From assembly GCF_006345805.1 (NCBI RefSeq), contig NC_042999.1, positions 121,458,001 to 121,522,000 of the forward strand: 64,000 bases of DNA. Direction: 5' to 3'. The stretch is from Octopus sinensis (taxonomy: Eukaryota). The position numbers and the translations under genes were made by a program. A model generated the notes under the pieces. The model saw nothing but the letters and a program-made list of their open reading frames with translations. It made no database searches and was not told the origin of the DNA. Shown here piece by piece: positions 3,137 through 57,059 of this stretch (position 1 is the first letter of the stretch; the number at the start of each line of letters is the position of its first letter).

Positions 3137-3180
<44 letters not shown>

Positions 3181-3185
<5 letters not shown>

Positions 3186-4394: not shown

Positions 4395-4435
<41 letters not shown>

Positions 4436-5670: not shown

Positions 5671-5796
5671 ATATATTTATATACATATATATATGTGTGT
5701 GTATGGTATACTCAGATGTATATATATAATATATGTATGTATATAATAGTACACACACATTCGTGCTATATCTCTACATACGTGTATATATACATA

Positions 5797-11285: not shown

Positions 11286-11670
11286 TAGGCACAGCTGTGG
11301 TAAGAAATTTGCTTCCCAACCACAGGGTCGAAGGTTCTGTCCCACCTTCAGCAAATGTCTTCAACTATAGCATCGAGATGACCAAAGCCTTGTCAGTGGA
11401 TTTAGTAGATAGTAATTGAAAGAGACCTGTTATACATATATATGAATATATGTGGTGGTGGTGTGTGGGGGGGGGGTTGAATCAGTGTTTGCTCCCCATC
11501 ACAGCTTGACAACTGATGTTCATGTGCTAAGGCCCCAGTAAAAGACACTGATAGAATAAGTACCAGGCTTTAAAAAAAAATAACTACTGGGTGTTGATTG
11601 ATTTCACTAAAATATCTTCAAGGTCAAGCCCCAACATACCTAGAGTTTAATGAGTGAAACAACTAAAGGG
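11286..11670 (+). mobile_element. tRNA-derived SINE (dominant family of this window)
   Basis: ggc..gctgtggtaagaa..ttgcttcccaaccac head, ccaaagccttg..agtggattt body, gatagaataagtacc segment and a degenerate tgaaac tail; homologous to 15677, 41028, 47263 and 54965. Confidence 0.8.
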
Positions 11671-11729
11671 AAAGGTATATATATATATATATACCCATGT
11701 GTATTTGTTGCTGTGTATATATATATATA

Positions 11730-15300: not shown

Positions 15301-15676
15301 AAGGTGCATTGCGCAGCATTGTTAAGGTGCAGACAGTGTCGAGCTGACAATAACAACATTGTATGTTCCATTCCAGGACTGAGCAGTGTGTGTTCTTGAG
15401 CTAAACCCATTTTCCCATGACTCCAGATCACTCAGCTGTAGAAATGAGTTGCGGTGTCATTGGTGTCAAGCTGTATCAGCTTTTCCCTTTTTCCCTTGGA
15501 CAATATCAGTGGTGTGAAGAAGAAAGACTAATATGTATGGGTAATGGCTGGTCTTCCACAGATGACCTTGTCTAGACTTGTGCCTCAGAGAGAAACTATC
15601 TAGGTGCTATCCCATGGTCATTCATGACTGAAGGGGAAAGAATAAAAGTAAAATAATAAAAACTATTTACATATAA

Positions 15677-16030
15677 GTGCAGTCGTGGCTGTGTGGTAAG
15701 AAGCTTGCTTCGCAACCACATAGTTCTGTGTTCAGTCCCACTACATGGCACCCTAGGCAAGTGTTTTCTACTACAGCCACAAGCCAACCAAAGCCTGGGA
15801 GCCTGAGTGGATTTGTTAGACAAAAACTGAAAGAAGCCTGTCGTATATATATATGTATTTGTAATTTGTGTCTGTTTGTCCCCCACTATCGCTTAACAAC
15901 CAATGGCTCGGCAAAAGAAAACTGATAGAATAAGTACTAGGCTTACAATGGATAAGTCCTGTGGTTGATTTGTTCAACTAAAGGCAGCACTCCACCATGG
16001 ATGCAGCCAAATGGCTGAAAAGAATAAAAG
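15677..16030 (+). mobile_element. tRNA-derived SINE, full length
   Basis: gtggctgtgtggtaagaagcttgctt head through tail ggcagcactccaccatggatgCAGCCaaatGGCTGaaa. Confidence 0.85.
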
Positions 16031-16684
16031 AATATAAACATATGTATATATACACCACATGCACACACATATATTTATATGTTTATATATATTAATATAG
16101 ATAGGAAAGTTATAAATAAAGGTCATTACATATTTTTCCTTTATTAGAGCAAATTTGGCTTACAGCTGTTTCCCGTAGTTATTTTAGGTACATTACTGGT
16201 AGGTTCACTCAATCAGTCTATTGATCAGTTGAGAAAAATTGAATGACCTAAATAAGTTAATGTTACTTTCCTCAGAGCCATTTCTTGTTATAACAAAGCA
16301 GAACACTGAAGGAATGGTGAGTGTATGGGGGAGGGAGGAAATGATGGAAAGATGCAAGTAGAATAGAGAAAAAGAAGAAGACAGGTTATGAAGGGGTGAA
16401 GAGAAGTAAGGAAAGGACAGAGAAAGGGGTCACTTAATAGAATTAGGAGTATAGGACAGCTGAAATTTGGGAAAAATACAGTCATAAAACATTAGTGTTT
16501 TTAGCAACAAACAGGAACAAATTAACGTTGTTTTCAGTTATATATATAAATAGATAGATAGATAGATAGATAGACTGACAGACAAACAGACAGACAGATA
16601 TGAAAAGAAATGAAGCAAAAATTAACAATTAGAAGTTGATCATTGGTGTTTTATATATATATATATATATGATTTCTTCATCAA

Positions 16685-16900: not shown

Positions 16901-17272
16901 TGAGTGGTGTATAGTATTGAAGGATCTATGAATCTGATAGTGGGACAGGAACTATTTTCTTGCTGAAGATATGTATCCATATCTTTTATGTATTTTAGCC
17001 AAAAGGCTGTAACCATGCTGGGGCTCTGCCAGTATCATCACATTTTCAATGGCTATTCCTATGAGGTGCTTTCATTGGGTGAGGAAAATTGTTGTTGCTG
17101 CTCTCATTTGAATTTATTGCCTTGATATTGCCTCATCTGAGATCTTGCATAGCAGAAGGTCAGAATGTTTCTTGGAAACATGTCCACTCCATGTAAATCT
17201 CGTACATGTATATATAGTTATATAAATACATATACACATACATACATACATATATACTTTATATATATATAT

Positions 17273-20432: not shown

Positions 20433-20505
20433 ATGTGTGTGTGTATAAGTTTGTGTGTTTGTCCCGCCAACATCGTTTGACAACCGATGTGTTTACATCC
20501 CCGTA

Positions 20506-20657
20506 CAGCAGGGATTGCCACCAGCCCCTGCTGGAGCCCTGTGGAGCTTTAGGTGTTTTCTATTAATAAACACTCACAACACCCGTCTGGGAATCGAAAC
20601 CACAATCCTACAACCGTGAGTCCACTGCCCTAACCACTTGGCCATTGTGCCTCCACA
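20506..20657 (-). mobile_element. Second tRNA-derived SINE family, head fragment
   Basis: Reverse complement gtggaggcacaatggccaagtggttagggcagtggactcacgg...gtttcgattccc has A- and B-box-like motifs and is homologous to 45474. Confidence 0.75.
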
Positions 20658-21133: not shown

Positions 21134-23950
21134 ATACTCAAACTCGGTGTGTGACACACTAAGTACATATTAGGCAACTTGATGTAGTTGTGTGTGCTAC
21201 ATATCGCCCTCCAGATGCCCCAAGCCATGTGGGCAAGTTTGAAGACTGCCTTATAAAATAGAAGAAATTCTAACCACATTAGAGCAACACATAGGTGTGC
21301 TTCTTATGGGAGACTTCAATCTGCCCAATGTCAGATGGCCCGAGGGCCTTTCTCTCCCAGGAATGACAAGATGTGAACGAGGACAGGCGAGGTCCCTCCT
21401 GAACCTCATCAACACCCTGTACATGGAGCAGGTAATACTCCAACAACCAGGGCAGGTAACACACTGGATCTCTGCTTCAACAAATGACATGGATCTCATC
21501 CATAATGTGAAAGTGACACTGACACTACTCTCGGATCACAACATGATAGAGCTGACCATGTACGGGCCAAAAGAGAGCACGGACATGCAGCCTACAAGAA
21601 ACCCTCAAAATCTTTCCAGCTTGAACTACCATAAGGCAAAAACTGGAAACAAATTGAGAAAGAGATCCTCAAACAAAACTGGCTAAATGTCTCTCCTCGC
21701 CAGACATCGACGTGAAACTTCAACAATTCATGTCTGTAATGCAAGCCATATGCTACAAATGTGTCTCAGAGAGAAAGGCCACTGTACCAAGAACAAAATC
21801 CCCAGAGAGAGGAAAATTTAATGAGACGGCGTACGAAATTTTCAAACGCCTAAAAACAAAAAGCAGAATGAAAGCAGTGAAAAGTCCCGCCTAAAAATAA
21901 AACTGTTGGAATCGAAAAATGTCTGCAACTTCCATGAAAAAGAAAGAGCAGACCAAGAAGCCTGGGCTATAGAAAACATAAAATCTATCCCCAGAGCTTT
22001 CTACAGGTATGCCAAAGAAACCAGCACAGTGCACTGTAGAATAGGGCCACTCCTCGAAAAGGATGGCACACTTACAGGAAACCAATGAGGGTAAGTGAAA
22101 TACTGAATGAGCAATTCAAGAGTGTTTTCACTCCACCCTTGGCATCTCAAATCACAATTCCAACTGACTTTTTTACCACTGCAGATATAAAATCAGAGGC
22201 GGGGTCGATAGATTACATCGATATAAAGGAAGACGATGTAACCAAGGCTATAGATGAAATGAAAACAGACTCAGCTACTGCCCCCGATGGATTCCGGCAA
22301 TCCTCCTAAAAGCATGTAAGAGAGTCCTAGCAAGACCACTGCAGTTCCTCTTCAGAGCTTCCTTGCAGCTGGCAAAACTTCCAGGAAAAACTGAAGGAAG
22401 GAGGTAAAATATGCCCCATTCATAAAGGAGGTAGCGAGCGGAGGAAGCCAAGAACTATCGACCTATCTCTCTGACCTCACACATCAGCAAGGTCATGGAA
22501 CGAATAGTCAGAAGGAAGTGATCACCTTCCTTGAAGCGAATGACTTGCTGCCCGACACCCAACATGGTTTCCGACAGGGAGAAGCTGTTTAACTCAGCTC
22601 CTACAACACTATGATGGGACTGGGTTGTGTGAAACGGCTGCTCAACCATTCAAATGTGGAAGTGATATATCTCGACTTTGCAAAGCCTTTGCTAAAGTCG
22701 ATCATGGAATGAATGTCACAAACTGCGTGATCTCAACATAGTTGGAAAACTGGGAGACGAAAGAATGGCTTCATGACTTTCTGAAGGATAGAAGTCAGGG
22801 TGGTAGTAGCCCAATGGGGCCACCTCCATTAACACACAAAATAGTGAGCGGGTGTTCCGCAGGGCACTGTTCTGGGACCACTACTGTTCATACTGGCCCT
22901 CAGACATGCCCTCAGCCACGCAGAGAGCCACGATCACAAGTTAATGCAGATGATACAAAAGTTTCACAGGCAATACAGAACACTGAGGACACTAAACACC
23001 TGCAATGTGAGCTGGATGAAATATACAAGTGGGGCTGAAAAGAATAGCATGCAGTTCAATGCTGGAAAGTTTGCAAGCTTTATACTATCAGCATGCAAAC
23101 TGAATGCAATACCCAATGGAAGACACTGGACCCGGAGGGATTGCAATCCCAGAGGCACAATCAGTGCGTGACCTGGGTCTTCACATGAGATTGAACGCGA
23201 CCTTTCATGTACATTTGCTAACACTGACAATGAAATGTAGACGGCTGGCTGGATGGATTCTTAGAAACTTTAGAACAAGAGACAAGAAACCATGATGGTC
23301 CTCTGGAAGACACTTGTCCTAAGCCACTTTGACTATTGCTCTCAGCTATGGTCACCATCCGTGTCAACGTTGATCACAGGACTTGAGGCGATCCAACGAA
23401 GCTACACAAAGAAGATAGCCTCTATGCAGAATGTAAGCTACTGGGAAAGACTCAAGAGATTAAAATTATATTCCCTGGAGCGTAGGCGGGAAAGATATGC
23501 CATAATATACATCTGGAAGATCCTGGAGGGAAGTGTCCTGAACTTTGGCATCGAGAGTTACGCAAATGCCAGAACTGGGCGCCACTGCGTGGTGCCAAGG
23601 ACTCCAAACCTGCCCATCAAGATGTATGACAAGATTCTGTGATAGCCTGGGGTTTCCGAGGCCCACAGCTCTTCAATATCCTCCGAAGAACCTGAGAGAC
23701 CTGCATGGGGTGGATACAGATGTCTTTAAAATGAAGCTGGATCTCTTCCTGTCAGGTGTCCCAGATGAACCAACTTCACGGCAGGAGGGGCAGCATGAGG
23801 GCAGATGCATCGAACTCTCTCATGCACCAAAAAGCAGTTGCTAGAAAACCTCCCTGAAGTGAAACCCAAGTAGCAACACCAAATGGCGGTGCCCCAGCAT
23901 GGCACAGCTCATAAGCTGAAACTAGAATCAATCAATCAATCAATCAATCA
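21134..23950 (+). mobile_element. CR1/L2-group LINE copy B, 5'-truncated (APE C-terminus + RT), (AATC)n tail
   Basis: Colinear with 31292-34081. Contains MGDFNLPNV, NYRPISLTSH, YADDTK-like and HFDYCSQLWSP motifs. Tail at 23926-23950; flanked by (TA)n on both sides. Confidence 0.95.
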
Positions 23951-24060
23951 TATGTGTATATATATATTATTATATGTGTGTTATATATATATATATATGT
24001 GTGTATATATATATATATGTGTGGATATAAATATATATATATGTGTGTTGTATATATATA

Positions 24061-24103
<43 letters not shown>

Positions 24104-24134
24104 ATATATATATATATGTGTATATATATATATA

Positions 24135-24185
<51 letters not shown>

Positions 24186-24195
24186 TGTGTTATAT

Positions 24196-24236
<41 letters not shown>

Positions 24237-24595
24237 TGTGATATATATATAGATATATGTGTGTAATATATATATATATATGTGTGTATATATGTATATA
24301 TATATGTGTGTGTATATATATATATATGTGTTGTGTATATATATATATGTGTGTGTATATATATAGTGTTGTTGTATATATATATAATATATATATATGT
24401 GTGTGTATATAATATATATGTGTATATATATATATATATATGTGTATAATATATATATATATGTATTATATATATATATATATATATGTTGTTGTATATA
24501 TATAATATATGGTATATATATATATAAGTATATATATATATATGTCTGTGTATATATATATATATATGTTATATATATATATATATATATATATT

Positions 24596-24638
<43 letters not shown>

Positions 24639-24790
24639 GTATATATATATATATATGTGTTGTATATATATATATATGTGTGTGTATATATATATATATA
24701 TGTGTGTGTATATATATATATGTGTGTTATATATATATATATATGTGTGTGTATATATATATATTGTGTATATATATATATATATATATG

Positions 24791-24845
<55 letters not shown>

Positions 24846-24942
24846 TGTCTGTGTATATATATATATATATGTGTATATTATATATACTATATGTGTGTTG
24901 TATATATAGATATATATATATATATATATATATATATCTATT

Positions 24943-24985
<43 letters not shown>

Positions 24986-25052
24986 GTTATATATAATATA
25001 TATGTTGTAATATATATATATGTGTGTATTTATATATATATATGTGTATATC

Positions 25053-25086
<34 letters not shown>

Positions 25087-25349
25087 TTGTGTGTATATAT
25101 ATGTGTATATATATAATGTGATATATATATATTGTGTATATAATATATATATATATGTGTAATATATATGTGTTTTATATATATATATATATATATTTGT
25201 GTATCTATATATATTATATATATAATATATATATGTTATATATAGATATGTGTATATGTATATATATATATATGTGGGGCTAGGTATTATATATATATAT
25301 GTGTATATATATTATCTATATATGTGTATATAATATATTATTATAATAT

Positions 25350-25407
<58 letters not shown>

Positions 25408-25523
25408 ATATATATATATATGTGTATATATATATATGTGTATATATATATATAATATATATGTGTATATATATATAATATATGTGTATATATATATATA
25501 TATGTGTATATTATATATATATA

Positions 25524-25560
<37 letters not shown>

Positions 25561-25759
25561 ATATATATATATATATATATGTGTATATATATATATATAT
25601 ATATGTGCTATATATATCATATATATGTGTATATATATATATATATATTTGTGGATATTATATAGATATCTTTGTGTATATATATAGTAGATATGTGTGT
25701 ATATATATATGTGTGTGTATATTATATATATATGTGTGTATATATATAGATATGTGTGT

Positions 25760-25793
<34 letters not shown>

Positions 25794-26398
25794 ATAAATA
25801 TATATATATGTGTGTATATATATATATGTGTGTATATATATATATATGGTGTATATATATATATGTGTGTATATATATATATATGTGTGTTATATATATA
25901 TATGTGTGTTATATTATATATTATATATATGTGTGTATATATATATATATATGTGTGTATATATATATATATATGTGTGTAATATATATATATATATGTG
26001 TTATAATATATATATATGTGTTATATATATATATTATGTGTGTATTATATATATATGTGTGTATATATATATATGTGTGTATATTATATATTATATGTGT
26101 GATATATATATATATATATAATGTGGATATTATATATATATATGTGTATATATAATATTTTGTATAATATATATATATTGGTATATATATATATGTGTAT
26201 ATATATATATATATGTGTATATATATATATGTGTATATATATATAATATATGTGTGTGTGTATTGTGTGTATATATATATATCATATATATTTTATTATA
26301 TATATGTGGTTATATAATATATATATTCTTATATATATATTATATATGGTGTGTAGATACATATTATATATATATATGTGTGTATAATTTATATATAC

Positions 26399-26431
<33 letters not shown>

Positions 26432-26449
26432 GTGTGTATACATATATAT

Positions 26450-26483
<34 letters not shown>

Positions 26484-26506
26484 TATATGGTGTATATGTG
26501 TATATA

Positions 26507-26545
<39 letters not shown>

Positions 26546-26608
26546 ATATGTGTATAATATATATATATGTGTATATATATATATCTCTATGTGTAATATA
26601 TATATATA

Positions 26609-26643
<35 letters not shown>

Positions 26644-26712
26644 GTGTATATATGTGTATATATTATATATGTGTATATTATATGTGTATAGGTGTATATA
26701 TATATATATTGT

Positions 26713-26745
<33 letters not shown>

Positions 26746-27650
26746 ATATATATGTATAATGTTGTATATATATAAGTATATAGGTGTAGATTTATATATA
26801 TATATGTGTATATATTATATATATGTATAATATATATATATATATATGTGTGTAATGTGTATATATATATATATATGTGTGTATATGTGTGTATATATAT
26901 AATATATGTGTATATATATATATATACATATATATATATTTATATATGTGTATATATATATATATGTGTGTATATATATATATATAATTATGTGTTGTAT
27001 ATATATATTATATATATATAATATGTGATGTGTTTTATAATATCTATATTGTGTGTATATATAATATAATATATATTGGTATATATATATGATATATATA
27101 TATGTGTTATATATATATATATTATATATATATATATATATATGTGTGAATATATATATATATAATGTATATATATATATATATATGTGTGTATATATAT
27201 AATATATATATATGTGTGTATATGTGTATATAATATATGTGTGTGTATATATTATAGTATTATATATATATAGTTTATAGTGTATATATATATATGTGTG
27301 TTGTATATATGTATATGTATATATATAATATATGTGTATATGTGTATATATATATGTGTGTTATATATATATATATATGTAATATATATATATTATATGT
27401 GTATATGTGTATATATATATATATGTGTGTATATATAGATATATATATATATATGTATATATATATCTATTTGTATATATATATATTAGTGTGATATAAT
27501 ATATATATATACCATATCTATGTGTATATGTATATATATTATCATATAATATATATACATATATAATGTGTATATATTATATATATATTTTATGTGTATA
27601 TATATATATATGTGTGTATATAATATATATATAAATGTGTATATATATAT
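23951..27650. repeat. About 3.7 kb degenerate (TA)n/(TG)n array
   Basis: Directly visible; all ORFs here are YI/VC artefacts. Confidence 0.95.
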
Positions 27651-27829
27651 AACTACAAAATTAGAAATGGAGAAACATACTTAAATCAAAAAACATCAAT
27701 ACCAGATGATACCCAATCAATACTTAGTACACCATTACATATCAGTAAAGGCATATACAAAATATACAGTAAAAGTAAATAGACAAAGAGATATAAGTAT
27801 AAAATTTCAAATATAATATGTAATTAAAT

Positions 27830-27945
27830 CAAATCGACAGCTGTTTCGGCAGTGAGGGCAGTCATACCTCATTTAACCTATAAGCCATAAAGGCAGGTAT
27901 AAATGAGGCATTAACAAGGATGCCTCACGGCCTCTTCAGAGAATT
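27830..27945 (-). ncRNA. Penelope-type minimal hammerhead ribozyme motif with extended stem II
   Basis: Minus strand reads CUGAAGA (27939-27933), GGCCGUGAGGCA...UGCCCUCACUGCC stem II, GAAA (27847-27844), C-AGCU-G, UC site (27836). Stem I pairs poorly. Confidence 0.6.
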
Positions 27946-28280
27946 AAATTTGTTATAATTGTGAAAAAGATTATTTAAACCATATACATATAAATATAAA
28001 AATATAAAAATGTAAAATAAAAACTTATACATAAACTTCATAATGCTACACTATATAATATAATACTCATTGGTACAATAAAATAAAGCAAGGTAAACAG
28101 AACAAAATAAAACAAAATATATATCAGTGTATATATTAATATTAATAAGCACCGTTATTAAATATTGGCTAATAGTTTTTTAAAAAAAACTAACACATAG
28201 GGAGATGGAAAAATAATTAAATAAAACCATGGTTCAGTTCATAAAATTATAAAGCTATAAAAGTCAATAAAAATTACTAT

Positions 28281-28760: not shown

Positions 28761-30082
28761 TTTTCCAGATACTCTATCTTCTAATTAGCCTTAAGATTAA
28801 ATTAAATAACGTTTAATATTGATACCGTCAAATTAGCCTTAGGATTAAATTAAATAACGTTTAATATTGTTTAATATTGTTAATAATTATTGTTAATTAG
28901 CCTTAAGATTAAATTAAATAACGTTTAATATTGTTTTAATATTGTTAATAATTTTTCAGATACTCTATCTTCTAATTAGCCCTAAGATTAAATTAAATAA
29001 CGTTTAATATTAATAACGTCTAATTAGCCTTAGGATTAAATTAAATAACGTTTAATATTGTTAATAATTATTGTTAATTAGCCTTAGGATTAAATTAAAT
29101 AACGTTTAATATTGTTTAATATTGTTAATAATTACTGATAATAGCCTTAAGATTAAATTAAATAACGTTTAATTGTTTTATATTGTTAATAATTATTGTT
29201 AATTAGCCTTAGGATTAAATTAAATAACGTTTAATATTGTTTAATATTGTTAATAATTATTGTTAATTAGCCTTAAGATTAAATTAAATAACGTTTAATA
29301 TTGTTTTAATATTGTTAATAATTCTTCAGATACTCTATCTTCTAATTAGCCTTAAGATTAAATTAAATAACGTTTAATATTACCCACACTCTAATATAAT
29401 ATTAACATTGCTAATATATTTTCAGATACTCTATCTCCTGATTAGCCTTAAGATTAAATAACGTTTTTATCCACACTCTAATATAATATTAATATTGCTA
29501 AATATTTTCAGATACTCTATCTTCTAATTAGCCTTAAGATTAAATTAAATAACGTTAATATTAATAACGTCTAATTAGCCTTAAGATTAAATTAAATAAC
29601 GTTTAATATAATAAACGTCTAATTAGCCTTAAGATTAAATTAAATAACGGTTAATATTGCTTAATATTGTATATATAATTTTTCAGATACTCTTCTTCTA
29701 ATTAGCCTTAAGATTAAATTAAATAACGTTTAATATTACCCACACTCTAATATAATATTAATATTGCTAATATATTTTCAGATACTCTATCTCCAAATTA
29801 GCCTTAAGTTTAAATAACGTTTTTTTTTTACCCACACTCTAATATAATATTAATATTGCTATATATATTTTCAGATACTCTATCTCCTAATTAGCTTAAG
29901 ATTAAACAACGTTTTCATCCACACTCTAATATAATATTAATATTGCTAATACATTTTCAGATACTCTATCCCCTAATTAGCCTTAAGATTAAATAACGTT
30001 TTTACCCAAATAACGTTTTTACACAAACTTTAATATGTTAATATTTCTTTTTCAAGTACTCTATCTTCTAATTAGCCTTAAT
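28761..30082. repeat. AT-rich composite minisatellite, about 19 copies of core aattagcctta(a/g)gattaaattaaataacg
   Basis: The core recurs with alternating spacer modules (tttaatattg.., ttttcagatactctatct, acccacactctaatataatatt). Copies counted by eye. Confidence 0.92.
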
Positions 30083-30142
30083 ATCTTCCTGTCTTCTCTC
30101 GAACATAATTAGATAGATAAACGGATAGACGGATTATCCAGC

Positions 30143-31051
30143 ATGTCCAGAGCATGGAGACGTGACGAGCTGGATTTATTCGTACGAGCTGGGAGTGCGC
30201 CGGCGGAGATAGCCCTAGCGAGGTGATTGCGGCTGCGCTGAAGAGCAGAGGCTACAAGAGGACGGCGGCTCAGATGGAGCGAAAGAGACAGGAATTCGTG
30301 CGCTCATATGCGCTTGTACGGTCGCACATTGGCGCACTTGATGCCATCTTTGAGAACGAGCGGGGCAAAGATGGCAAGAATGGAGACGATGAAAGAAGTC
30401 ACCCCCACCTGGTGGACGCCGGGAGGAGGTTTTGAATGAGAAACCTGCCCGGGAAGTGAACCCAGGTGCAAGTTCTCCAACCGGCAGCAAGGGCCATGGA
30501 GACGGAGAACCCGGTGAAGAGGTATAGAGGGAGGAAGAAGAACTAAAAGAAGGACTGGAAGAGCTAAAGGAAAAGAAAAAGCTCAAGCAGACCAAAGAGT
30601 GAAACAACCAGAAATAGAAGTGGAACCGCCAAAGGATGGAACCAAACAGCGCACACGGGGTGTATGTCTACCTGAGAGGTTCCTGCTGGCATGGAAAGGA
30701 AGGTGCAGGCTGCCGCTTTGCACATCGGGGACCCTGCCACAGAGACACGAGGCAGATGGACAAACCATCAACACAAGAAAAGGGATGGACCACGCACCAC
30801 CTGCCCCAAAGCGGAGGTACGCAGATGTTGTGCGCGCCACAAACAGCCAACATGATGTTGTCGAAAGAGCAGCTGCTGAGCAACAATCTTTTTTGTGCAT
30901 GGCACAAAAGATTGTACAGCAGCTGACCTTGCTTCATCAAACCCAAGCCCGCAGGTGGGACTACCCACTATATACCAGACCACCACAGCAAACAGACACA
31001 GGATGGACACCGCCGGCAACAACGTACACCTCACCTCGATACTCCTACTGA
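30143..31051 (+). pseudogene. LINE ORF1: Myb/SANT-like domain, coiled coil and CCCH zinc finger (reconstructed across frameshifts)
   Basis: MSRAWRRDELDLFVRA/W..IAAALKSRGYKRTAAQMERKRQEFVRSY, then EEELKEGLEELKEKKKLKQ, then VC/YLRGSCWHGKEGAGCRFAH (30665-30725). Confidence 0.7.
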
Positions 31052-33982
31052 ACATCAGAGGACTGCAAACACTCAGTAGCAGGACAAAGATCCCGTTCCT
31101 GAGAGACTTTGTTTGCATGCAATCAAGCCATATGCATAGCACTTACAGAAACGCACCTGAAACCGGACCATAGCAAGATGCGGAGTACACATACCACAGT
31201 ATGCTGTACTACGGACCGACAGGAAAGAAAGGAGTCATGGAGGTGTTGCTATGTACATCCGTGAGGACCTCACACCCCAGGTCCTCTTGTCATACTCAAA
31301 CTCGGTGTGTGACACACTAATTGTACATATTAAGCAACTTGATGTAGTTGTGTGTGCTACATATCGCCCTCCAGATGCCCCAAGCCATGTGGCAAGTTTG
31401 AAGACTGCCTTATAAAAATAGAAGAAATTCTAACCACATTAGAACAACACATAGTGTGTGCTTCTTATGGGAGACTTCAATCTGCCCAATGTCAGATGGC
31501 CCGAGGGCCTTTCTCTCCCAGGAATGACAAGATGTGAACGAGGACAGGCGAGGTCCCTCCTGAACCTCATCAACACCCTGTACATGGAGCAGGTAATACT
31601 CCAACCAACCAGGGCAGGTAACACACTGGATCTCTGCTTCACAAATGACATGGATCTCATCCATAATGTGAAAGTGACACTGACACTACTCTCGGATCAC
31701 AACATGATAGAGCTGACCATGTACGGGCCAAAAGAGAGCACGGACATGTAGCCTACAAGAAACCCTCAAAATCTTTCCAGCTTGAACTACCATAAGGCAA
31801 ACTGGAAACAAATTGAGAAAGAGATCCTCAAACAAAACTGGCCTAAATGTCTCTCCTCGCCAGACATCGACGGAAACTTCAACAATTCATGTCTGTAATG
31901 CAAGCCATATGCTACAAATGTGTCCCCAGAGTGAAAGGCCACTGTACACAAGAACAAAATCCCCAGAGAGAGGAAAATTTTAATGAGACGGCGTACGAAA
32001 TTTTCAAATCGCCTAAACAAACAGATTGAAAGCAGTGAAAAGTCCGCCTAAAAATAAAACTGTTGGAAATCGAAAAATGTCTGCAACTCTCCCATGAAAA
32101 AAAAGAGCAGACAAAGAAGCCTGGGCTATAGAAAACATAAAATATCCCCAGAGCTTTCTACAGGTATGCCAAAGAAAACAGCTACAGTGCACTGTAGAAT
32201 AGGGCCACTCCTCGAAAAGGATGGCACACTTACAGGAAAACCAATGAGGGTAAGTGAAATACTGAATGAGCAATTCTAGAGGGTTTTCACTCCACCCCTT
32301 GGGCATCTCCAAATCACCAATCCAACTGACTTTTTTACCACTGCAGATATAAAATCAGAGGCGGCGACGATAGATTACATCGATATAAAGGAAGACGATG
32401 TAACCAAGGCTATAGATGAAATGAAAACAGACTCAGCTACTGGCCCCGATGGATTCCCAGCAATCCTCCTAAAAGCATGTAAGAGAGTCCTAGCAAGACC
32501 ACTGCAGTTCCTCTTTCAGAGCTTCCTTGCAGCTGGCAAACTTCCAGGAAAACTGAAGGAAGGTAAAATATGCCCCATTCATAAAGGAGGTAGCAGAGCG
32601 GAAGCCAAGAACTATAGACCTATCTCTCTGACCTCACACATCAGCAAGGTCATGGAACGAATAGTCAGAAGGAAGCTGATCATCTTCCTTGAAGAGAATG
32701 ACTTGCTGCCGACCCAACATGGTTTCCGACCAGGGAGAAGCTGTTTAACTCAGCTCCTACAACACTATGACTGGGTGCTGAACGGCTGCTCAACACTCAA
32801 ATGTGGAAGTGATATATCTCGACTTTGCAAAGGCCTTTGATAAAGTCGATCATGGAATGATATGTCACAAACTGCGTGATCTCAACATAGTTGGAAAACT
32901 GGAGAATGGCTTCATGACTTCTGAAGGATAGAAGTCAGTGGTAGTAGCCAATGGGGCCACCTCCATTAACACACAAATAGTGAGCGGGTTCCGCAGGGCA
33001 CTGTTCTGGGACCACTACTGTTCATACTGGCCCTCTCAGACATGCCCTCAGCCACGCAGAGAGCCACGATCACAAGTTATGCAGACGATACAAAAGTTTC
33101 ACAGGCAATACAGAACCCTGAGGACACTAAACACCTGCAATGTGAGCTGGACGAAATATACAAGTGGGCTAAAAACAATAGCATGCAGTTCAATGCTGGA
33201 AAGTTTCAAGCTTTAACAGCATGCAAAACTGAATGCAATACCCAATGAATACACTGGACCCGGAGGGATTGCAATCCCAGAGGCACAATCAGTGCGTGAC
33301 CTGGGTATTCACATGAGTGATGACGCGACCTTTCATGTACATGTTGCTAAACTGACAATGAAATGTAGACGGCTGGCTGGATGGATTCTTAGAACCTTTA
33401 GAACAAGAGAACAAGAAACCATGATGGTCCTCTGGAAGACACTTGTCCTAAGCCACTTTGACTATTGCTCTCAGCTATGGTCACCATCTAGTGTCAAGTT
33501 GATCACAGAACTTGAGGCGATCCAACGAAGCTACAAAAAGAAGATAGCCTCTATGCAGAATGTAAGCTACTGGAAAGACTCAAGAGATTAAATATTATTC
33601 CCTGGAGTGTAGGCGGGAAACATATGCCATAATATACATCTGGAAGATCCTGGAGGGAAGTGTCCTGAACTTTGGCATCGAGAGTTACGCAAATGCCAGA
33701 ACTGGGCGCCACTGCGTGGTGCCTAGGACTCCAAACCTGCCATCAAGATGTAGGACAAGATTCTGTGATAGCCTGGGTTTCCGAGGCCCACAGCTCTTCA
33801 ATATCCTCCCGAAGAACCTGAGAGACCTGCATGGGGTGGATACAGATGTCTTTAAAATGAAGCTGGATCTCTTCCTGTCAGGTGTCCCAGATGAACCAAC
33901 TTCACGGCAGGAGGGGCAGATGAGGGCAGCTGCATCGAACTCTCTCATGCACCAAATAGCAGTTGCTAGAAAGCCTCCATGA
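31003..33982 (+). pseudogene. LINE ORF2: APE endonuclease + reverse transcriptase, multiple frameshifts
   Basis: SILLLNIRGL, GGVAMYI, TYRPP, MGDFNLP, TLDLCFTN, GPDGFP, NYRPISLTSHISKVMERIV, QHGFRPGRSCLTQLL, DFAKAFDKVDH, SYADDTK and HFDYCSQLWSP. Confidence 0.93.
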
Positions 33983-34050
33983 AGTGAAACCAAGTAGCAA
34001 CACCAAATGGCGGTGCCCCAGCATGGCCACAGCTCATAAGCTGAAACTAG

Positions 34051-34082
<32 letters not shown>

Positions 34083-34972: not shown

Positions 34973-35811
34973 ATACCCAATGAATACACTGGACCCGGAG
35001 GGATTGCAATCCCAGAGGCACAATCAGTGTGTGACCTGGGTATTCACATGAGTGATGACGCGACCTTTCATGTACATGTTGCTAAACTGACACTGAAATG
35101 TAGACGGCTGGCTGGATGGATTCTTAGAACCTTTAGAACAAGAGAACAAAAACCATGATGGTCCTCTGGAAGACACTTCCTAAGCCACTTTGACTATTGC
35201 TCTCAGCTATGGTCACCATCCAGTGTCAAGTTGATCACAGAACTTGAGGCGACCCAACGAAGCTACACAGAGAAGATAGCCTCTATGCAGAATGTAAGCT
35301 ACTGGGAAAGACTCAAGAGATTAAAATTATATCCCTGGAGCGTAGGCGGGAAAGATATGCCATAAGATACATCTGGAAGATCCTGGAGGGAAGTGTCCTG
35401 AACTTTGGCATCGAGAGTTACGCAAATGCCAGAACTGGGCGCCACTGCGTGGTGCCTAGGACTCCAAACCTGCCATCAAGATGTAGGACAAGATCTGTGA
35501 TAGCCTGGGCTTCCGAGGCCACCTCTTCAATATCCTCCCGAAGAACCTGAGAGACCTGCATGGGGTGGATACAGATGTCTTTAAAATGAAGCTGGATCTC
35601 TTCCTGTCAGGTGTCCCAGATGAACCAACTTCACGGCAGGAGGGGCAGATGAGGGCAGCTGCATCGAACTCTCTCATGCACCAAATAGCAGTTGCTAGAA
35701 AGCATCCATGAAGTGAAACAAGTAGCAACAACCCAAATGGCGGTGCCCCAGCATGGCCACAGCTCATAAGCTGAAACTAGAATCAATCAATCTCAATCAA
35801 TCAATCAATCA
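34973..35811 (+). mobile_element. LINE copy C, 3' fragment with (AATC)n tail
   Basis: Colinear with 33238-34081. Has ATA microhomology with the flanking (TA)n at the 5' junction; tail at 35781-35811. Confidence 0.95.
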
Positions 35812-36125
35812 TATATATATATATATTATATATGTATAATATATATATAATTATATATATATATGTATATATATATAATGTATATATATATATATGTATA
35901 TATATATATTGTATATATATATATGTGTATATATATATATGTATATATATATATATGTATATATAATATATATGTATATCATATATATGTATATATATTA
36001 TTGTATATATATATATTATATATATATTGTATATATATATATATGTATTATATATATATGTGTATTATATATATATATATGTATATATATATTATATTAT
36101 ATATAATTATATGTATATATATATA

Positions 36126-36887
36126 CAACATCAGAGACTTGGGAGTAATTGTGGACAACAACGTAAGCTGGGCCACTCATATAAACACCAAAGTTGACAT
36201 GGCCCGCAGAATGTGTTCCTGGATTCTCAGAACTTTCCAGTCGAGAGAATCCCACCATTATCCTTCTCTTCTCCACTTTTGCCCGACCCCACCTTGAATA
36301 CTGTTGTCCACTGTGGTCTCCCCACACAATACAAGGTATCATAAAAGTTGAAGCACCTCAAAGGGCAATCACAAAAAAGATAGATGGCATGACAGGCCTC
36401 GACTATTGGGGGACTAGAAAAGCTAAAACTCTATTCTCTCCAACGTCGTCGTGAGCGCTACATCATCTGCATGATGTGGAAAATATTCCATCAGCATTGC
36501 CCAAATGATGTTGGCATCACCTTTAAGGTACATCCAAGGCTTGGGCCCCGTGCCATCCGCCCAAAACAAAAATCGCACTCTCATCTCATAACAACAATAC
36601 GGCACAATTATTTCACCTCAATTGGCCCGCTCTCTTTAACATTACACCAAAACACATTAAAACAGAAACTGACCTATAGGGTTCAAGAAGTCTTTGGACA
36701 GATTCCTTCAAGAAATCCCGGATAACCCCCTACACCCGGATATGTCTCTGTAAACAATAACTCTCTACTTGAGTGGGCCATAGAGCCCAATTCTGACTTG
36801 AAAGACTTCACCAGGTGGTGCTATTAAGTTACATGGCCTGGGCCAATAATGGCCGAAACCTATCAAAGTATCAAAGTATCAAAGTAT
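36126..36887 (+). mobile_element. Related-subfamily LINE 3' fragment (copy D) with (TATCAAAG)n tail
   Basis: IRDLGVIVDNNVSW..WILRTF..RPHLEYCCPLWSP..LYSLQRRRERY. The 3' end reads ggtggtgc..atggcc..GGCCAataaTGGCCgaaac, then tatcaaag x3. Confidence 0.88.
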
Positions 36888-40928: not shown

Positions 40929-41027
<99 letters not shown>

Positions 41028-41308
41028 CTATCGGTCTCTTTTGCCGAACGGCTAAGTTATGGGGACATAATTACATCAGCATCGGTTGTCAAGTGAAGGA
41101 GAAGGGTGCAGACAAACACAGACACTCAAATACATAAATATTTATACAACAAGCTTCTTTCAGTTTCTGTCTGCCAAATCCACTCACAAGGCTTTGGTTG
41201 GCCCAAGATTATAGTAGAAGTCACTTGCCCAAGATGCCATGCAGTGGAACTGAACCCAGAACCTTGTGTTTAGTAAGCAAGCTATTTACCACACAACCAC
41301 TCCTGCGC
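41028..41308 (-). mobile_element. tRNA-derived SINE (dominant family), antisense
   Basis: Reverse complement of the head and body seen at 15677 (accacacaaccactcctgc; caaatccactcacaaggctttgg). Confidence 0.85.
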
Positions 41309-47262: not shown

Positions 47263-47830
47263 TGCAGGCATGGCTGTGTGGTAAGAGGATTGCTTCTCAA
47301 CCCCATAGTTTGAGGTTCAAACCCACTGCATGACATCTTGGGCAAGTGAGTGGATTTGGTAGACAGAAACTGAAAGAAGACTGTAGTATGTGCATGTGTG
47401 TGTGTGTGTATGCAAGGGGATGCTGAAAAGTTCCTGGCTTTGAGTAAAAGAAAATATAGGAGAATCACTTAGTAAAGGTTTTATGCAGCATATTACCCTC
47501 TCAGCTTCACACACTTATTGCAGTGGTCCTTTACTTTCTCTAAGCTCTGTAAAATAACTTGGAAGGTTGAGCCTCCAACCAAGCCTTTCACAATACTATG
47601 AAAGCAAGAAACTTTTCAGCACTTGCTCATGTGTGTGTTTGTGTGTTTGTATTTCTCCCTCACCTCTGCTTGACAACTGGTGCTGGTTTGTTTACATCTC
47701 CATAAAGCAGTGGTTCAACAAGAAGAGACCAATAGAATAAATAATCAATTTGTTCAAGCAAACTCTTCACAACAGTATCCTAATTGGTTGCAGTCCAATG
47801 ATTGAAACAATCAAACAGTAAAAGATTCAT
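47263..47830 (+). mobile_element. Dominant SINE split by a mariner-type MITE (47409-47631)
   Basis: SINE head at 47263-47395. MITE with inverted ends tgctgaaaagttcctggcttt / aaagcaagaaacttttcagca in the TG linker. SINE tail resumes near 47640 and ends CAGTCcaatGATTGaaac. Confidence 0.75.
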
Positions 47831-54964: not shown

Positions 54965-55950
54965 GGTGCAGGCATAGCTGTGTGATAAGAAGCTTGCTTC
55001 TCAACCACAAGGTTTTGGGCTCAGTCTCACTGCATGGCACCTTGAGCTACTGTCTTCTGTTATAGCCTCAGGCTGACTTTGGAAGCCTGTCATATATACA
55101 TATACATACATACATACATGCACATATATATATATGTATGTATATATGTATGTCAGGTCACTTTTGAGTGCTACTAGTAACATGTAACCCAGTACAACCT
55201 GTTGCATGGTCGGGTTGTCGGCGACTAAACCGGCAACCCCACCAAGCTTGCTTGGTGAGGAGGGTGTTTATTGGACACCCTGCGGGTTGAAAAACAAAAC
55301 CCATCAAAGGGTGGAGGAACTCTTGAGAGTGAACGGCCATTCGGTAAATGTCTTAAGGCTGTATCATGCGCAGGGACATAGAAATAATCGGACTGAATAC
55401 CCGATCACACGGTTAAACCATTGGGAGTGAAGGACCCCTAGCCTTTGTTAGGGCATCCTTCTAGGAGAAGGTAACTCAAGTAACTGGGATAATTCCGACA
55501 TAAAACCTGCGGCTCAGTGGTTACCGATGATGTTGACTTGTTCTTCTTTTCGGATTATAGCTGCTGTTGCTTAGTGAGTGGGATTGACTCAGTGCACAGC
55601 CTTTCCTCACTTTAAAAAAAATCTTCTTGCACATGCATTGCGCAATAACAACATTGATTAAGCTTCGTGCAATGGCCATACTCGATAACGAGGGGGCAGC
55701 CACCATGTATGTATGTGTGTGTGTGCGTGTGTTTGTGTGTGTGTGTGTGTGTGTTTGTCCCCCACTACTGCCTGACAACCACTCTTGGTGTGTTTACATT
55801 GCTATAGCTTAGCAGTTCAGCAAAAGAGTCCAATAGAATAAGTACTAGGCTTTAAAAAGTCCTGGGATTGACTTGTTTGACTAAAACCCTCGAAGGCTGT
55901 GCCCCAGCATGGCTGCTGCCTAATGACTGAAACAATTGAAAGATAAAAGA
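54965..55950 (+). mobile_element. Dominant SINE (54965-55100 + 55700-55950) interrupted by a GC-richer insert resembling an RTE 5'UTR (about 55160-55700)
   Basis: SINE head gcaggcatagctgtgtgataagaagcttgctt; tail ggctgtgccccagcatggc..tgactgaaac. The insert carries cctttgttagggcatcc.tctaggagaagg, which I recall as an RTE 5'UTR motif. Confidence 0.65.
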
Positions 55951-57059
55951 TAATCATATTTTCTGCTTATTTTGCTGCACCATATCAATTACATGGAGCA
56001 GTTGTAACCAGTACTGCATTTTTGAGAAATGTATAAAAGCCACATGTGCAAAATCTGGCATTATATAGTTTCACTCTGAATAATTCTCCTTGATATCATT
56101 GACAGACAAAAGCTTTCTTGAAAGCTTCAGTAAAGAACATAAGCTTCTCACCAAAAGAAAATGAAAAGCAAGGAGTAAAGAATAGATATTATCTGGTTGG
56201 ACTTAGAATTATGAAGATATAATAGTTTGTTACTTGTTTGCTTAACAGTTACTATAATGTACTTATGCTTTGTAGCACTTCAATGTCCCTTTGAAGTGTT
56301 GTTATCAAAAATTATTGTCCATTTCTTTTAAAGTTGATGAAAATTATACAGACTCATTAATGCCATTTTAAGGCATTAATGCCCTGGGCTTTGACCAGGA
56401 GCTCCACATTAATCTATGTATGCTGTAGTTGTATATGTAGTGATCCCAATGCATTGCTTTGCTTGGGGGTATATTATGTTATTAAGGTGGGTCTATCATT
56501 CACAGAAACATATACAAAATTCATGTAATATTTTCATTCATTATAATATTGTTTGTTATGCATTTTAGGATTTTTTTTATAACTTATTCATTAAAAATTA
56601 GTATAAATAACAAAACTGGTTAATTGAATCGAATAAAATTCGTTTTAGTATTTTGTATTTGATATTACTGAAAAGTATTGTATTTCATACAAGAAGACAG
56701 TTTTGTGGAAGAATTAGCCAACATGAATCTTCAACAGCTGTGCATGGTACTTTAATCCATCCCATAGAGATGAAATACAAAAACTGGCTCCTAAGTATCA
56801 CTTTGTTTATAGAGTTGGAAGTGAAAATTGCTATTGATTTCAAATATATTTCTTAGAAATACTAAATTTGAAATTCAATGACAACCAACGACTACAAGAA
56901 AAAAGAGAGGTTAATGCTAAAGTTATAATAATTTGTTATACAAAATATCTCTTTCCCCAATAAAATTGACCTGACATTAGTTTTCAACTGCATTAATTCC
57001 AATAATTTTTTTTAAAAGACATTGTCTTTGATTTTATTTTATTGCAATTCTCTCAGCAT

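What the first reader, a model, noticed from the sequence alone, without database searches (positions are those of the whole stretch)
34009..34050. LINE 3' end shared with the dominant SINE, with a covarying 5-bp/4-nt hairpin: candidate SINE-LINE partner pair
Seen: LINE 34009-34047 GGCGGTGCCCCAGCATGGCCACAGCTCATAAGCTGAAAC aligns ungapped with SINE tail 55895-55933 GGCTGTGCCCCAGCATGGCTGCTGCCTAATGACTGAAAC (29/39 identical). The hairpin before AAAC keeps its geometry while its sequence changes: CAGCT-cata-AGCTG (LINE A/B/C), GGCCA-ataa-TGGCC (LINE D), CAGCC-aaat-GGCTG (SINE 15677) and CAGTC-caat-GATTG (SINE 47263). Established: stringent L2/CR1-type LINEs recognise a 3' stem-loop, and partner SINEs borrow that tail (eel UnaL2/UnaSINE1 paradigm). 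Inference: this LINE family or a relative mobilises the most abundant SINE here, and the hairpin is the RT recognition element.
Basis: partly seen in the sequence, partly recalled or inferred. Interest (0 to 1): 0.75.

Follow-up and report, generated by a model that had tools for sequence, protein, structure and literature searches.

The report
Octopod SINE borrows LINE two-hairpin tail
The last 39 bases of a CR1-like LINE in this octopus-like genome fold into two conserved RNA hairpins, and the commonest SINE here carries a worn copy of them, which is the ordinary textbook way a SINE hijacks a LINE's copying enzyme.

Summary
LINE 34009-34047 and SINE 55895-55933 match at 29/39 ungapped; the best match anywhere in 200 shuffled windows is 25. 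A SINE-only profile finds the LINE ends, and a LINE-only covariance model finds the SINE end (E about 1e-4).

The shared block is two hairpins, not one: GGCGGTGC-CCCA-GCATGGCC, with a conserved G/G mismatch, then CAGCT-CATA-AGCTG, then AAAC and short tandem repeats. It lies in the 3' UTR, 27 nt after the ORF2 stop.

Related LINE tails from Argonauta and marine metagenomes keep both hairpins while the sequence changes: 96% of cells pair, and 12 of 12 pairs show double changes. So the hairpin is a genuine conserved RNA element, plausibly the reverse-transcriptase recognition site.

The copies are old and only 2 of 4 keep hairpin 2.

LINE A/B/C is probably not the actual mobiliser. It ends in (AATC)n while the SINE ends in A-rich 7-8-mers, and its copies are far younger. 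A truncated LINE relic at 16986-17205(-) and a metagenome relative fit as well or better.

This is a new example of a known mechanism.

The parts
30140..34081 (+). LINE B, the longest copy. It is degraded by frameshifts. It has an upstream ORF1-like region, APE endonuclease at 31455-31748, RT at 32280-33245, the ORF2 stop at 33980-33982, a short 3' UTR and a terminal (AATC)n.
   Evidence: Six-frame reading. Pfam PF14529 and PF00078. tblastn to P0002, P0012 and P0043. tblastx to the Argonauta LINE upstream region places the 5' extent near 30140.
34009..34028 (+). Hairpin 1 of the LINE B tail: GGCGGTGC-CCCA-GCATGGCC. It has 7 pairs plus a conserved G4/G17 mismatch next to a G.U pair.
   Evidence: It is the minimum-free-energy fold, with ensemble frequency 0.83 and z=-3.4. 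Covariation in relatives.
34030..34043 (+).
   Evidence: All 5 pairs show compensatory changes across LINE relatives.
34044..34081 (+). AAAC, then TAG, then the (AATC)n terminal tandem repeat of LINE B.
   Evidence: Sequence.
21134..23950 (+). LINE A, a 5'-truncated copy 94.7% identical to B. Its tail module is at 23885-23922, with a 1-nt deletion in hairpin 1, followed by (AATC)n.
34973..35812 (+). LINE C, a 5'-truncated copy about 96.5% identical to B. Its tail module at 35739-35777 is identical to B's.
36127..36887 (+). LINE D, a 5'-truncated copy of a more distant subfamily. Its tail is at 36814-36859: GGTGGTG-(11-nt loop)-CATGGCC, then GGCCA-ATAA-TGGCC, then GAAAC and (TATCAAAG)n.
   Evidence: tblastn. 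Covariance-model hit at E=8e-11..
16975..17205 (-). LINE E, a roughly 220-nt 5'-truncated relic of another subfamily. Its tail at 17030-16992 reads GGCAGAGCCCCAGCATGGTTACAGCC-TTTT-GGCTAAAAT, followed by ACATAAAAGATATGG. I first took it for a SINE tail. It carries the variants that the SINE tails carry.
   Evidence: C-terminal coding remnant (tblastn to P0001, E=1.9e-5). Alignment with LINE B, L002 and L003. Local alignment to SINE tails gives z=9.1 and 7.9.
15677..16040 (+). Full-length SINE copy. Its tail module is at 15983-16021, hairpin 2 (CAGCC-AAAT-GGCTG) is at 16004-16017, and it ends in (AGAATAAA)2.
   Evidence: nhmmer..
11287..11680 (+). Full-length SINE copy with a decayed tail module at 11622-11660. 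Hairpin 2 keeps 3/5 pairs.
54966..55955 (+). SINE copy split at its internal TG/TA microsatellite by 547 bp (left half 54966-55158, right half 55706-55955). Its tail module at 55895-55933 is the best-preserved one: hairpin 1 keeps 7/7 pairs and hairpin 2 keeps 3/5.
47263..47830 (+). SINE copy split by 217 bp (47263-47411 and 47629-47830). Its tail module is at 47770-47808, with hairpin 2 (CAGTC-CAAT-GATTG) at 47791-47804.
41020..41308 (-). SINE copy that lacks the tail. It is truncated at the 3' end and runs into (TA)n.

Best explanation
The 39 bases at 34009-34047 are the 3'-terminal recognition module of a CR1-like LINE that has an APE endonuclease and a reverse transcriptase and no poly(A).

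In the RNA the module forms two adjacent hairpins. Hairpin 1 has a conserved purine/purine mismatch next to a G.U pair. Hairpin 2 is a 5-bp/4-nt helix. They are followed by (A)AAC and a short tandem repeat.

Inferred by analogy with eel UnaL2 and amniote CR1: the element's reverse transcriptase binds this structure on its own transcript, and the terminal repeats anneal or slip on the nicked target to prime reverse transcription.

The tRNA-headed SINE that is the commonest interspersed repeat in the window ends in a mutated copy of the same two-hairpin module, in the same terminal position. It was therefore most likely mobilised in trans by LINEs of this clade. The subfamily that did it is probably not LINE A/B/C. 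It is more likely an older sister with A-rich 7-8-nt terminal repeats, of which LINE E (16975-17205, minus strand) and the metagenome element L002 are the nearest examples seen.

Shown: the homology, its terminal position, the RNA structure and its covariation. Inferred: RT binding, trans-mobilisation, and which subfamily was the partner.
For: Homology:
- 29/39 identities against a maximum of 25 in shuffles.
- The SINE-only HMM hits the LINE tails at E=0.012, and its best LINE hit outside the window is L002 at E=0.011.
- The LINE-only covariance model hits the SINE tail at E=1.1e-4.
- Local alignment of S55706 gives z=10.3 to LINE B and 9.1 to LINE E.

Position:
- The module starts 27 nt after the ORF2 stop.
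- It lies immediately before the terminal repeats in both the LINE and the SINE.
- There is no similarity upstream of base 1 of hairpin 1.

Structure:
- All octopod LINE tails fold as (((.((((....)))).))).(((((....)))))...., with z from -1.8 to -4.3.
- 20 LINE tails from outside the window: 95.9% of cells paired, against 58.5% in shuffles and 30-44% with slid partners. 12/12 pairs have double changes, and the covariation score is 0.83 against 0.21.
- The structure-blind MAFFT alignment of 8 tails gives 95.8%, against 82% and 27-36%.
- Tails not used to build the model (L049, L083, L071, L067, L089) were recovered at E from about 1e-5 down to 1e-8. Each lies just 3' of ORF2 and has a new stem sequence.

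Literature: stringent LINEs and their SINEs share such tails (PMC3747384, PMC1636434, PMC5729268, PMC11481361).

Against another clade: a second LINE-like 3' end in the window (17205-17400, minus strand) shows no similarity to the SINE tails, with z from -1.2 to 1.3.
Against: - Only four SINE tails are available and all are old. Two of them (47629 and 11287) cannot be aligned to any LINE tail on their own (z below 1) and are placed only by their register within the SINE family.
- The SINE tails lack the otherwise invariant G4 of hairpin 1, reading A, C or T instead. Individually they do not fold better than shuffles.
- The terminal repeat units of the SINE and of LINE A/B/C differ. Discrimination between LINE E, L002 and LINE B as the best match is small.
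- There is no experimental evidence for RT binding or trans-mobilisation.
- The genome outside this window could not be searched.
Confidence: 0.8

Rival explanations
1. LINE A/B/C is itself the family that mobilises, or mobilised, this SINE.
For: It is the only near-full-length LINE with the shared module in the window, and it matches S55706 at 29/39. Its copies are young, at 95-97% identity, so the family may still be active.
Against: - Its terminal repeat is (AATC)n, while the SINE ends in AGAATAAA/ATAAAAG-like units.
- Its hairpin-2 closing pair is T-A, while the SINE, LINE E and L001-L003 have C-G.
- The SINE copies are 70-80% identical to each other and so are far older than these LINE copies.
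- S15677 matches LINE E much better than LINE B, scoring 37 against 21.
Confidence: 0.15
2. The SINE is moved by a LINE of another clade, for example RTE. On this view the two-hairpin block is a relic or a recombinant passenger rather than the functional tail.
For: Published work reports RTE-BovB as strongly expanded in octopus genomes (PMC8967140). The window holds a second LINE-like remnant at 17205-18039 on the minus strand. SINEs are known to swap tails.
Against: The block is at the very 3' end of every tailed SINE copy, directly before the terminal repeats, which is the functional position. The other LINE-like 3' end in the window has no similarity to the SINE tails. The SINE profile finds no non-SINE match in the window apart from tails of this LINE clade.
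Confidence: 0.07
3. The hairpins are conserved for a purpose other than RT recognition. Examples are transcript 3'-end formation or stability, or protection from exonucleases in a LINE that lacks poly(A).
For: Covariation shows that the structure is selected, not what binds it. No binding data exist.
Against: A non-autonomous SINE has captured exactly this module and nothing upstream of it. That is what is expected if the module is what the LINE machinery needs in trans. Functionally tested analogues exist in UnaL2 (PMC1636434) and are proposed for CR1 (PMC5729268).
Confidence: 0.08
4. The similarity is chance, or is driven by low-complexity sequence.
For: The block is short, at 39 nt, and two of the four SINE tails are individually unrecognisable.
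Against: Shuffles never exceed 25/39. Profile and covariance-model searches in both directions are significant. The block is GC-rich in an AT-rich window. Exact 15-mer matches in the viral collection all lack the remainder of the module.
Confidence: 0.01

Closest known systems
Eel UnaL2 (L2 clade) and UnaSINE1
   Same: [quoted passage not shown] In RNA the tail is a stem-loop containing a functionally required mismatch or bulge, and it is followed by short terminal repeats used in priming (PMC1636434, PMC3747384). Here too the stem carries a conserved non-canonical position, the G/G mismatch next to G.U.
   Different: There are two adjacent hairpins here rather than one long stem. The loop and stem sequences are unrelated. 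The terminal repeats are (AATC)n or A-rich 7-8-mers, not (TGTAA)n. Nothing here has been tested experimentally. Clade membership (L2 versus CR1) was not determined.
Amniote CR1 LINEs and CR1-tailed SINEs (TguSINE1 and PittSINE in passerines)
   Same: The 3' end consists of a hairpin proposed as the RT binding site plus a terminal microsatellite of about 8 bp. tRNA-headed SINEs carry that CR1-derived tail (PMC5729268, PMC4316615).
   Different: The microsatellite is not AUUCURUG. The module has a second hairpin. The host is a cephalopod. Sequence homology to the amniote CR1 tail was not tested.
Bivalve SINEs with conserved central domains (CORE, V, Meta, Deu) and their CR1, CR1-Zenon, L2 or Nimb LINE partners
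   Same: Mollusc tRNA-derived SINEs share 35-61 bp of 3' end with LINEs at 72-95% identity (PMC11481361). The 39-nt, 74% match here lies in that range. The SINE also has a conserved central domain, which is shared with elements in Argonauta loci.
   Different: That work did not describe RNA structure. The octopod pair and its two-hairpin module were not found in the papers I could search.
Octopus SINEs OK, OR1 and OR2 (Ohshima and Okada 1994) and the tRNA-Core class of octopus repeat annotations
   Same: These are octopod tRNA-derived SINEs with a conserved centre, and they are very abundant in octopus genomes (PMC4758252, PMC4824008, PMC8967140, PMC13282606).
   Different: I could not obtain their sequences, so identity with the window's SINE is unverified. 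No LINE partner is stated in the papers held.

Membership tests
SINE-LINE partner pair with a shared 3' tail (stringent type) | The SINE 3' end is homologous to the 3' UTR end of the LINE | tested here: met
   29/39 identities against a shuffle maximum of 25. SINE HMM to LINE at E=0.012. LINE covariance model to SINE at E=1.1e-4. z=10.3.
SINE-LINE partner pair with a shared 3' tail (stringent type) | The homology sits at the extreme 3' end of both elements, directly before the terminal repeats | tested here: met
   The homology begins at base 1 of hairpin 1 and ends at AAAC.
SINE-LINE partner pair with a shared 3' tail (stringent type) | The same terminal repeat unit is present in the SINE and in the proposed LINE partner | tested here: not met
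   For LINE A/B/C the unit is (AATC)n, against AGAATAAA/ATAAAAG in the SINE. For LINE E (ATAAAAGAT) and L002 (AGAGTAAA) the units are similar, but the scores do not discriminate strongly.
SINE-LINE partner pair with a shared 3' tail (stringent type) | The SINE and the LINE partner were active over overlapping periods | tested here: inconclusive
   In the window, LINE A/B/C copies are 95-97% identical and SINE copies 70-80%. This argues against A/B/C, but with 3 and 5 copies no age landscape can be built. LINE D and LINE E are old.
SINE-LINE partner pair with a shared 3' tail (stringent type) | The LINE mobilises the SINE tail in trans | not testable with these tools
   This needs a retrotransposition assay.
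Structured RT-recognition element in a LINE 3' UTR | An RNA helix conserved with compensatory changes across related LINEs | tested here: met
   12/12 pairs have double changes and 95.9% of cells pair, against 58.5% in shuffles and 30-44% with slid partners. Also. An alignment-free fold of 65 LINE 3' ends gave 18 of 65 with z below -1.64 (a crude test).
Structured RT-recognition element in a LINE 3' UTR | The element's reverse transcriptase binds the structure | not testable with these tools
   Inferred only, by analogy with UnaL2 (PMC1636434).
CR1-like (CR1/L2 group) non-LTR retrotransposon | ORF2 with an APE-type endonuclease followed by a reverse transcriptase | tested here: met
   PF14529 at 31455-31748 and PF00078 at 32280-33245. 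Relatives carry the same two domains.
CR1-like (CR1/L2 group) non-LTR retrotransposon | A 3' end made of a hairpin plus short tandem repeats, without poly(A) | tested here: met
CR1-like (CR1/L2 group) non-LTR retrotransposon | Placement of the RT within the CR1 or L2 clade by phylogeny with reference elements | not tested
   No named reference sequences were available. The sources give no clade names.
tRNA-derived CORE-SINE | A tRNA-related head with A and B boxes | tested here: inconclusive
   ARAGORN and Rfam find no tRNA. Box-like motifs (TGGCTGTGTGG and GGTTCAGTYCC) are seen by eye only.
tRNA-derived CORE-SINE | The CORE central domain | not tested
   A roughly 110-nt central domain is conserved in Argonauta elements. 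Its resemblance to CORE is from my memory only.

The most novel reading that the evidence does not exclude
The two-hairpin block may be an undescribed, clade-wide recognition element of a CR1-like LINE lineage. Its features are a GGYGG...YGRCC stem with an invariant purine/purine mismatch beside a G.U pair, often a CCCA loop, then a 4-6-bp hairpin, then (A)AAC. The lineage would span octopods and other marine invertebrates. The large SINE expansion of octopus genomes, about 12% of O. vulgaris, would have depended on capturing it.
Probability: 0.35. Interest if true: 0.45.

Novelty: new member of a known kind. Interest (0 to 1): 0.3.

Why it matters
SINEs are reported at about 12% of the Octopus vulgaris genome and LINEs at about 13% (PMC13282606). 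I found no paper naming the LINE that drove the SINE expansion.

Pinning the SINE tail to a CR1-like LINE clade gives a concrete partner hypothesis. Defining a compact 39-nt two-hairpin module with strong covariation gives a small RNA target for binding and retrotransposition assays. It also gives a covariance-model signature that could help annotate LINE and SINE 3' ends in mollusc and other marine invertebrate genomes.

Conceptually this adds an example to an established mechanism. It is not a new mechanism.

Tried and rejected
- ARAGORN and Rfam (gathering and E-value modes) found no tRNA or other family in the window or in a SINE head, only TA-repeat artefacts.
- A scan of viral contigs for GGTGCCCCAGCATGG gave 38 hits. 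All are chance 15-mers in phage-like contigs without the rest of the module.
- A literature search for the motif letters, and four searches for an octopus SINE-LINE partner, found nothing relevant. Albertin 2015 is not held.
- Cluster look-ups gave no clade names.
- Covariance-model hits at 18840-18898, 10671-10720 and 15543-15596 were inspected and rejected as tails. The first lies inside another element's coding remnant, and none is followed by terminal repeats.
- I first counted 17030-16992(-) as a SINE tail. It is a LINE relic, LINE E.
- The A/C flank similarity is only shared TA/TG microsatellite, not a segmental duplication.
- My terminal-repeat finder often mislocated the repeat, so that z-score summary is only rough support.
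- Pfam did not confirm the class of the second LINE-like remnant. It was used only as a negative control.
- Argonauta loci carry SINE-like elements that share only the head and centre, with a different tail, so they gave no extra SINE tails.

Full report
**What the window is**

The window is AT-rich eukaryotic DNA (GC mostly 0.3-0.37), full of TA/TG microsatellites and interspersed repeats. The best protein relatives of its LINE come from the octopod Argonauta hians and from marine metagenomes. The central domain of its SINE recurs in Argonauta loci. I therefore treat it as an octopod genome. The species was not determined.

**Checking the observation**

- The two 39-mers read as quoted and share 29/39 positions without gaps.
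- In 200 dinucleotide-preserving shuffles of the whole window, the best match of the LINE 39-mer on either strand averaged 21.6 and never exceeded 25.
- A profile built only from SINE copies found the LINE ends 34006-34049 and 35736-35779 at E=0.012, aligned to the last 44 profile positions.
- A covariance model built only from LINE tails found the SINE end 55891-55933 at E=1.1e-4.

**The LINE**

LINE B spans about 30140-34081 and is the longest copy.
- It carries an APE endonuclease (PF14529, 31455-31748) and a reverse transcriptase (PF00078, 32280-33245) in a reading frame broken by several frameshifts.
- Protein-level similarity to the Argonauta element extends upstream to about 30140.
- ORF2 stops at 33980-33982, so the 39-nt block lies in a very short 3' UTR. 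It is followed by TAG and (AATC)n.

The other copies are these.
- LINE A (21134-23950) and LINE C (34973-35812) are 5'-truncated copies, 94.7-96.9% identical to B. Their apparently shared flanks are only TA/TG microsatellite.
- LINE D (36127-36887) is a truncated copy of a more distant subfamily.
- The tail at 17030-16992 on the minus strand, which I first took for a SINE tail, is preceded by a remnant of the LINE C-terminal coding region (tblastn to P0001, E=1.9e-5; alignment with LINE B, L002 and L003). It is a fifth LINE relic, LINE E.

**The SINE**

nhmmer finds six copies or fragments.
- Two are contiguous and full length: 15677-16040 and 11287-11680.
- Two are split at their internal TG/TA microsatellite by 547 and 217 bp: 54966-55158 with 55706-55955, and 47263-47411 with 47629-47830.
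- One lacks the 3' end: 41308-41020, minus strand.
- One is a short fragment: 20408-20511.

This makes it the commonest interspersed repeat in the window by copy number.

Copies are only 70-80% identical to each other. The four tails align without gaps to the LINE module. They match LINE B at 29, 25, 23 and 16 of 39 positions.

**The shared block is two hairpins, not one**

All octopod LINE tails fold with the same minimum-free-energy structure, (((.((((....)))).))).(((((....)))))...., with z-scores from -1.8 to -4.3. These are window LINE B and D, Argonauta L001 and L003, and metagenome contig L002.
- Hairpin 1 is GGCGGTGC-CCCA-GCATGGCC. It has a G/G mismatch at positions 4/17 next to a G.U pair.
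- SINE-LINE similarity starts exactly at the first base of hairpin 1 and ends at AAAC. Nothing upstream is similar.

**Relatives and covariation**

I fetched LINE relatives through the protein search and through one scan of metagenome contigs, which returned 80 loci. Tails from the closest relatives read as follows.
- L002, 70% amino-acid identity: GGCGGTGCCCCAGCATGGCCACAGCC-TGCG-GGCTGAAAC, then (AGAGTAAA)n.
- L001: ...CAGCC-GGCAAT-GGCTGAAAC, then (ATACAAG)n.
- L003: GGTGGTGCACCAGCATGACCACAGCCG-ACT-CGGCTGAAAC, then (ATTAAAAC)n.

More distant elements (35-48% identity) keep the architecture with different letters.
- Hairpin 1 examples: GGTGGAGTC-TAC-GACTTGACC (L055) and GGTGGACG-AACA-CGTTGGCC (L059).
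- Hairpin 2 stems: GAGTT/AACTC (L055), CATTA/TAATG (L083), CTTAG/CTAAG (L089).

A model built from eight LINE tails recovered further tails that had not been used to build it: L049, L083, L071, L067 and L089. Their E-values ran from about 1e-5 down to 1e-8, and each lies just 3' of ORF2 on the coding strand.

| Alignment | Cells paired | Shuffled partners | Slid partners | Pairs with double changes |
|---|---|---|---|---|
| 20 LINE tails from outside the window | 95.9% | 58.5% | 30-44% | 12 of 12 |
| 8 tails, structure-blind MAFFT alignment | 95.8% | 82% | 27-36% | 8 of 12, including all five of hairpin 2 |
| Window sequences included | 92.8% | 71% | 29-38% | 10 of 12 |

For the 20 outside tails, the covariation score is 0.83 against 0.21.

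Two caveats apply. I picked the first eight tails by eye, and the larger alignments were fitted to the model. The slid-partner controls and the newly recovered tails argue that the signal is real.

The hairpin before AAAC is indeed a conserved, covarying helix, but the evidence comes from LINE relatives rather than from the SINE copies.
- SINE 15677's stem, CAGCC/GGCTG, is simply the commonest LINE stem. The odd one out is LINE A/B/C, which has a T-A closing pair.
- Among the four SINE tails, hairpin 2 is intact in two (15677, and 47629 with one G.U pair). It has 3/5 pairs in the other two.
- Three SINE copies share GA on the 3' side of the stem, and two of those have the matching T on the 5' side. 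This hints at one compensatory change (CAGTC/GACTG) within the SINE family, but the sample is too small to count.
- Individual SINE tails do not fold better than shuffles.

**Which LINE is the partner**

Three points argue against LINE A/B/C itself.
- Its terminal repeat is (AATC)n. The SINE ends in A-rich 7-8-mers: (AGAATAAA)2 in 15677, and ...AAAGATAAAAGATAA in 55706.
- Its copies are far younger than the SINE copies.
- S15677 aligns much better to LINE E than to LINE B, with a local score of 37 against 21 and z of 7.9 against 2.4.

LINE E carries the SINE-type variants: A at positions 4 and 6, TT at 19-20, the CAGCC stem, and an ATAAAAGAT end. L002 has the same stem and an (AGAGTAAA)n repeat, and it is the best LINE hit of the SINE profile outside the window (E=0.011).

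The differences between LINE E, L002 and LINE B are small on such decayed copies. I therefore conclude only that the partner belongs to this clade and is probably an older, A-rich-repeat subfamily.

A second LINE-like 3' end lies at 17205-17400 on the minus strand. I think it is RTE-like from its C-terminal motif, which is my recollection and was not confirmed. It shows no similarity to the SINE tails (z from -1.2 to 1.3).

**Mechanism**

Shown:
- Homology between the SINE and LINE ends.
- The terminal position of the block in both.
- A selected two-hairpin RNA structure.

Inferred from tested analogues:
- The reverse transcriptase recognises the structure on the RNA.
- The terminal repeats help to prime on the nicked target.
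- The SINE transcript is accepted because it ends in the same module.

The analogues are these.
- UnaL2 and UnaSINE1 share a tail whose stem contains a bulge and a U-U mismatch that are required for retrotransposition (PMC1636434).
- Amniote CR1 elements and CR1-tailed bird SINEs have a hairpin plus an 8-bp microsatellite (PMC5729268).
- Stringent 3'-end recognition is reviewed in PMC3747384.
- Bivalve CORE and other SINEs share 35-61 bp at 72-95% identity with CR1, CR1-Zenon, L2 or Nimb LINEs (PMC11481361).

The conserved G/G mismatch here recalls the functional mismatch in UnaL2.

**Novelty and verdict**

The mechanism is textbook. What may be new is the specific octopod pair and the description of the compact two-hairpin module with clade-wide covariation. 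I found no paper stating the LINE partner of octopus SINEs or showing this motif. Repbase and Dfam entries could not be consulted.

I rate it a new member of a known kind, with modest interest.

Noticed in passing
window 16975-17205 (-): A roughly 220-nt 5'-truncated LINE relic, LINE E, from the same clade. Its tail and ATAAAAGAT end resemble the SINE tails more than LINE A/B/C does. It is easily mistaken for a tail-only SINE.
   Followed up: yes
window 15600-15665 (+): A further decayed tail-like sequence lies immediately upstream of SINE 15677: GGTGCTATCCCATGGTCATTCATGACTGAAGGGGAAAGAATAAAAGTAAAATAATAAAAAC. It may be another truncated element into whose A-rich end the SINE inserted.
   Followed up: partly
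window 54966-55955 and 47263-47830 (+): Two SINE copies are each split at their internal TG/TA microsatellite by unrelated DNA of 547 and 217 bp. This suggests insertions into, or rearrangements at, that microsatellite. Alternatively, the 'SINE' may be a composite of two modules.
   Followed up: partly
window 23950-24300, 35812-36125, 11660-11700, 40950-41020; L002 1770-1800: LINE and SINE 3' ends repeatedly abut (TA)n/(TG)n microsatellite. This could reflect a shared target preference of the endonuclease, or simply the abundance of TA repeats here. No control was run.
   Followed up: no
window 17205-18039 (-) and 18770-19400 (+): There are remnants of a second, different LINE-like element. 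ORF fragments read RRLRWYGHVARM...GRPRKTW and ...LSGEKLEVDHFRYCGS..., and the 3' end reads ...GTTAAAC(GAT)n. It looks RTE-like from memory, and Pfam gave no confirming hit. Its 3' end does not match the SINE tail.
   Followed up: partly
window 28830-30030 (+): An AT-rich tandem array with 48-96-bp periods lies directly upstream of LINE B. Whether it is the LINE's 5' UTR repeat or an unrelated satellite is unknown.
   Followed up: partly
window 3140-5694 and 23980-28000: There is a 1.3-kb tandem duplication at 99% identity (3140-4436 and 4400-5694). Several kb of extremely AT-rich TA/TG microsatellite follow elsewhere, with GC 12-15% and strong GC skew.
   Followed up: no
L001 12669-15511 and L003 1519-16311 (Argonauta hians): Argonauta carries repeated elements that share only part of the head and the roughly 110-nt central domain of the window's SINE. 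They have a different 3' half and tail. The central domain is therefore conserved across octopods while the tails differ.
   Followed up: partly
L048, L084, L097, L105, L109, L057, L077 (metagenome LINE tails): A second group of related LINEs has a hairpin with the same CCCA loop on different stems: AGTGC/GCACT, GCGC/GCGC and GTAC/GTAC. It is followed by (AAAAGTA)n-type repeats. The architecture is related but was not captured by my model.
   Followed up: no
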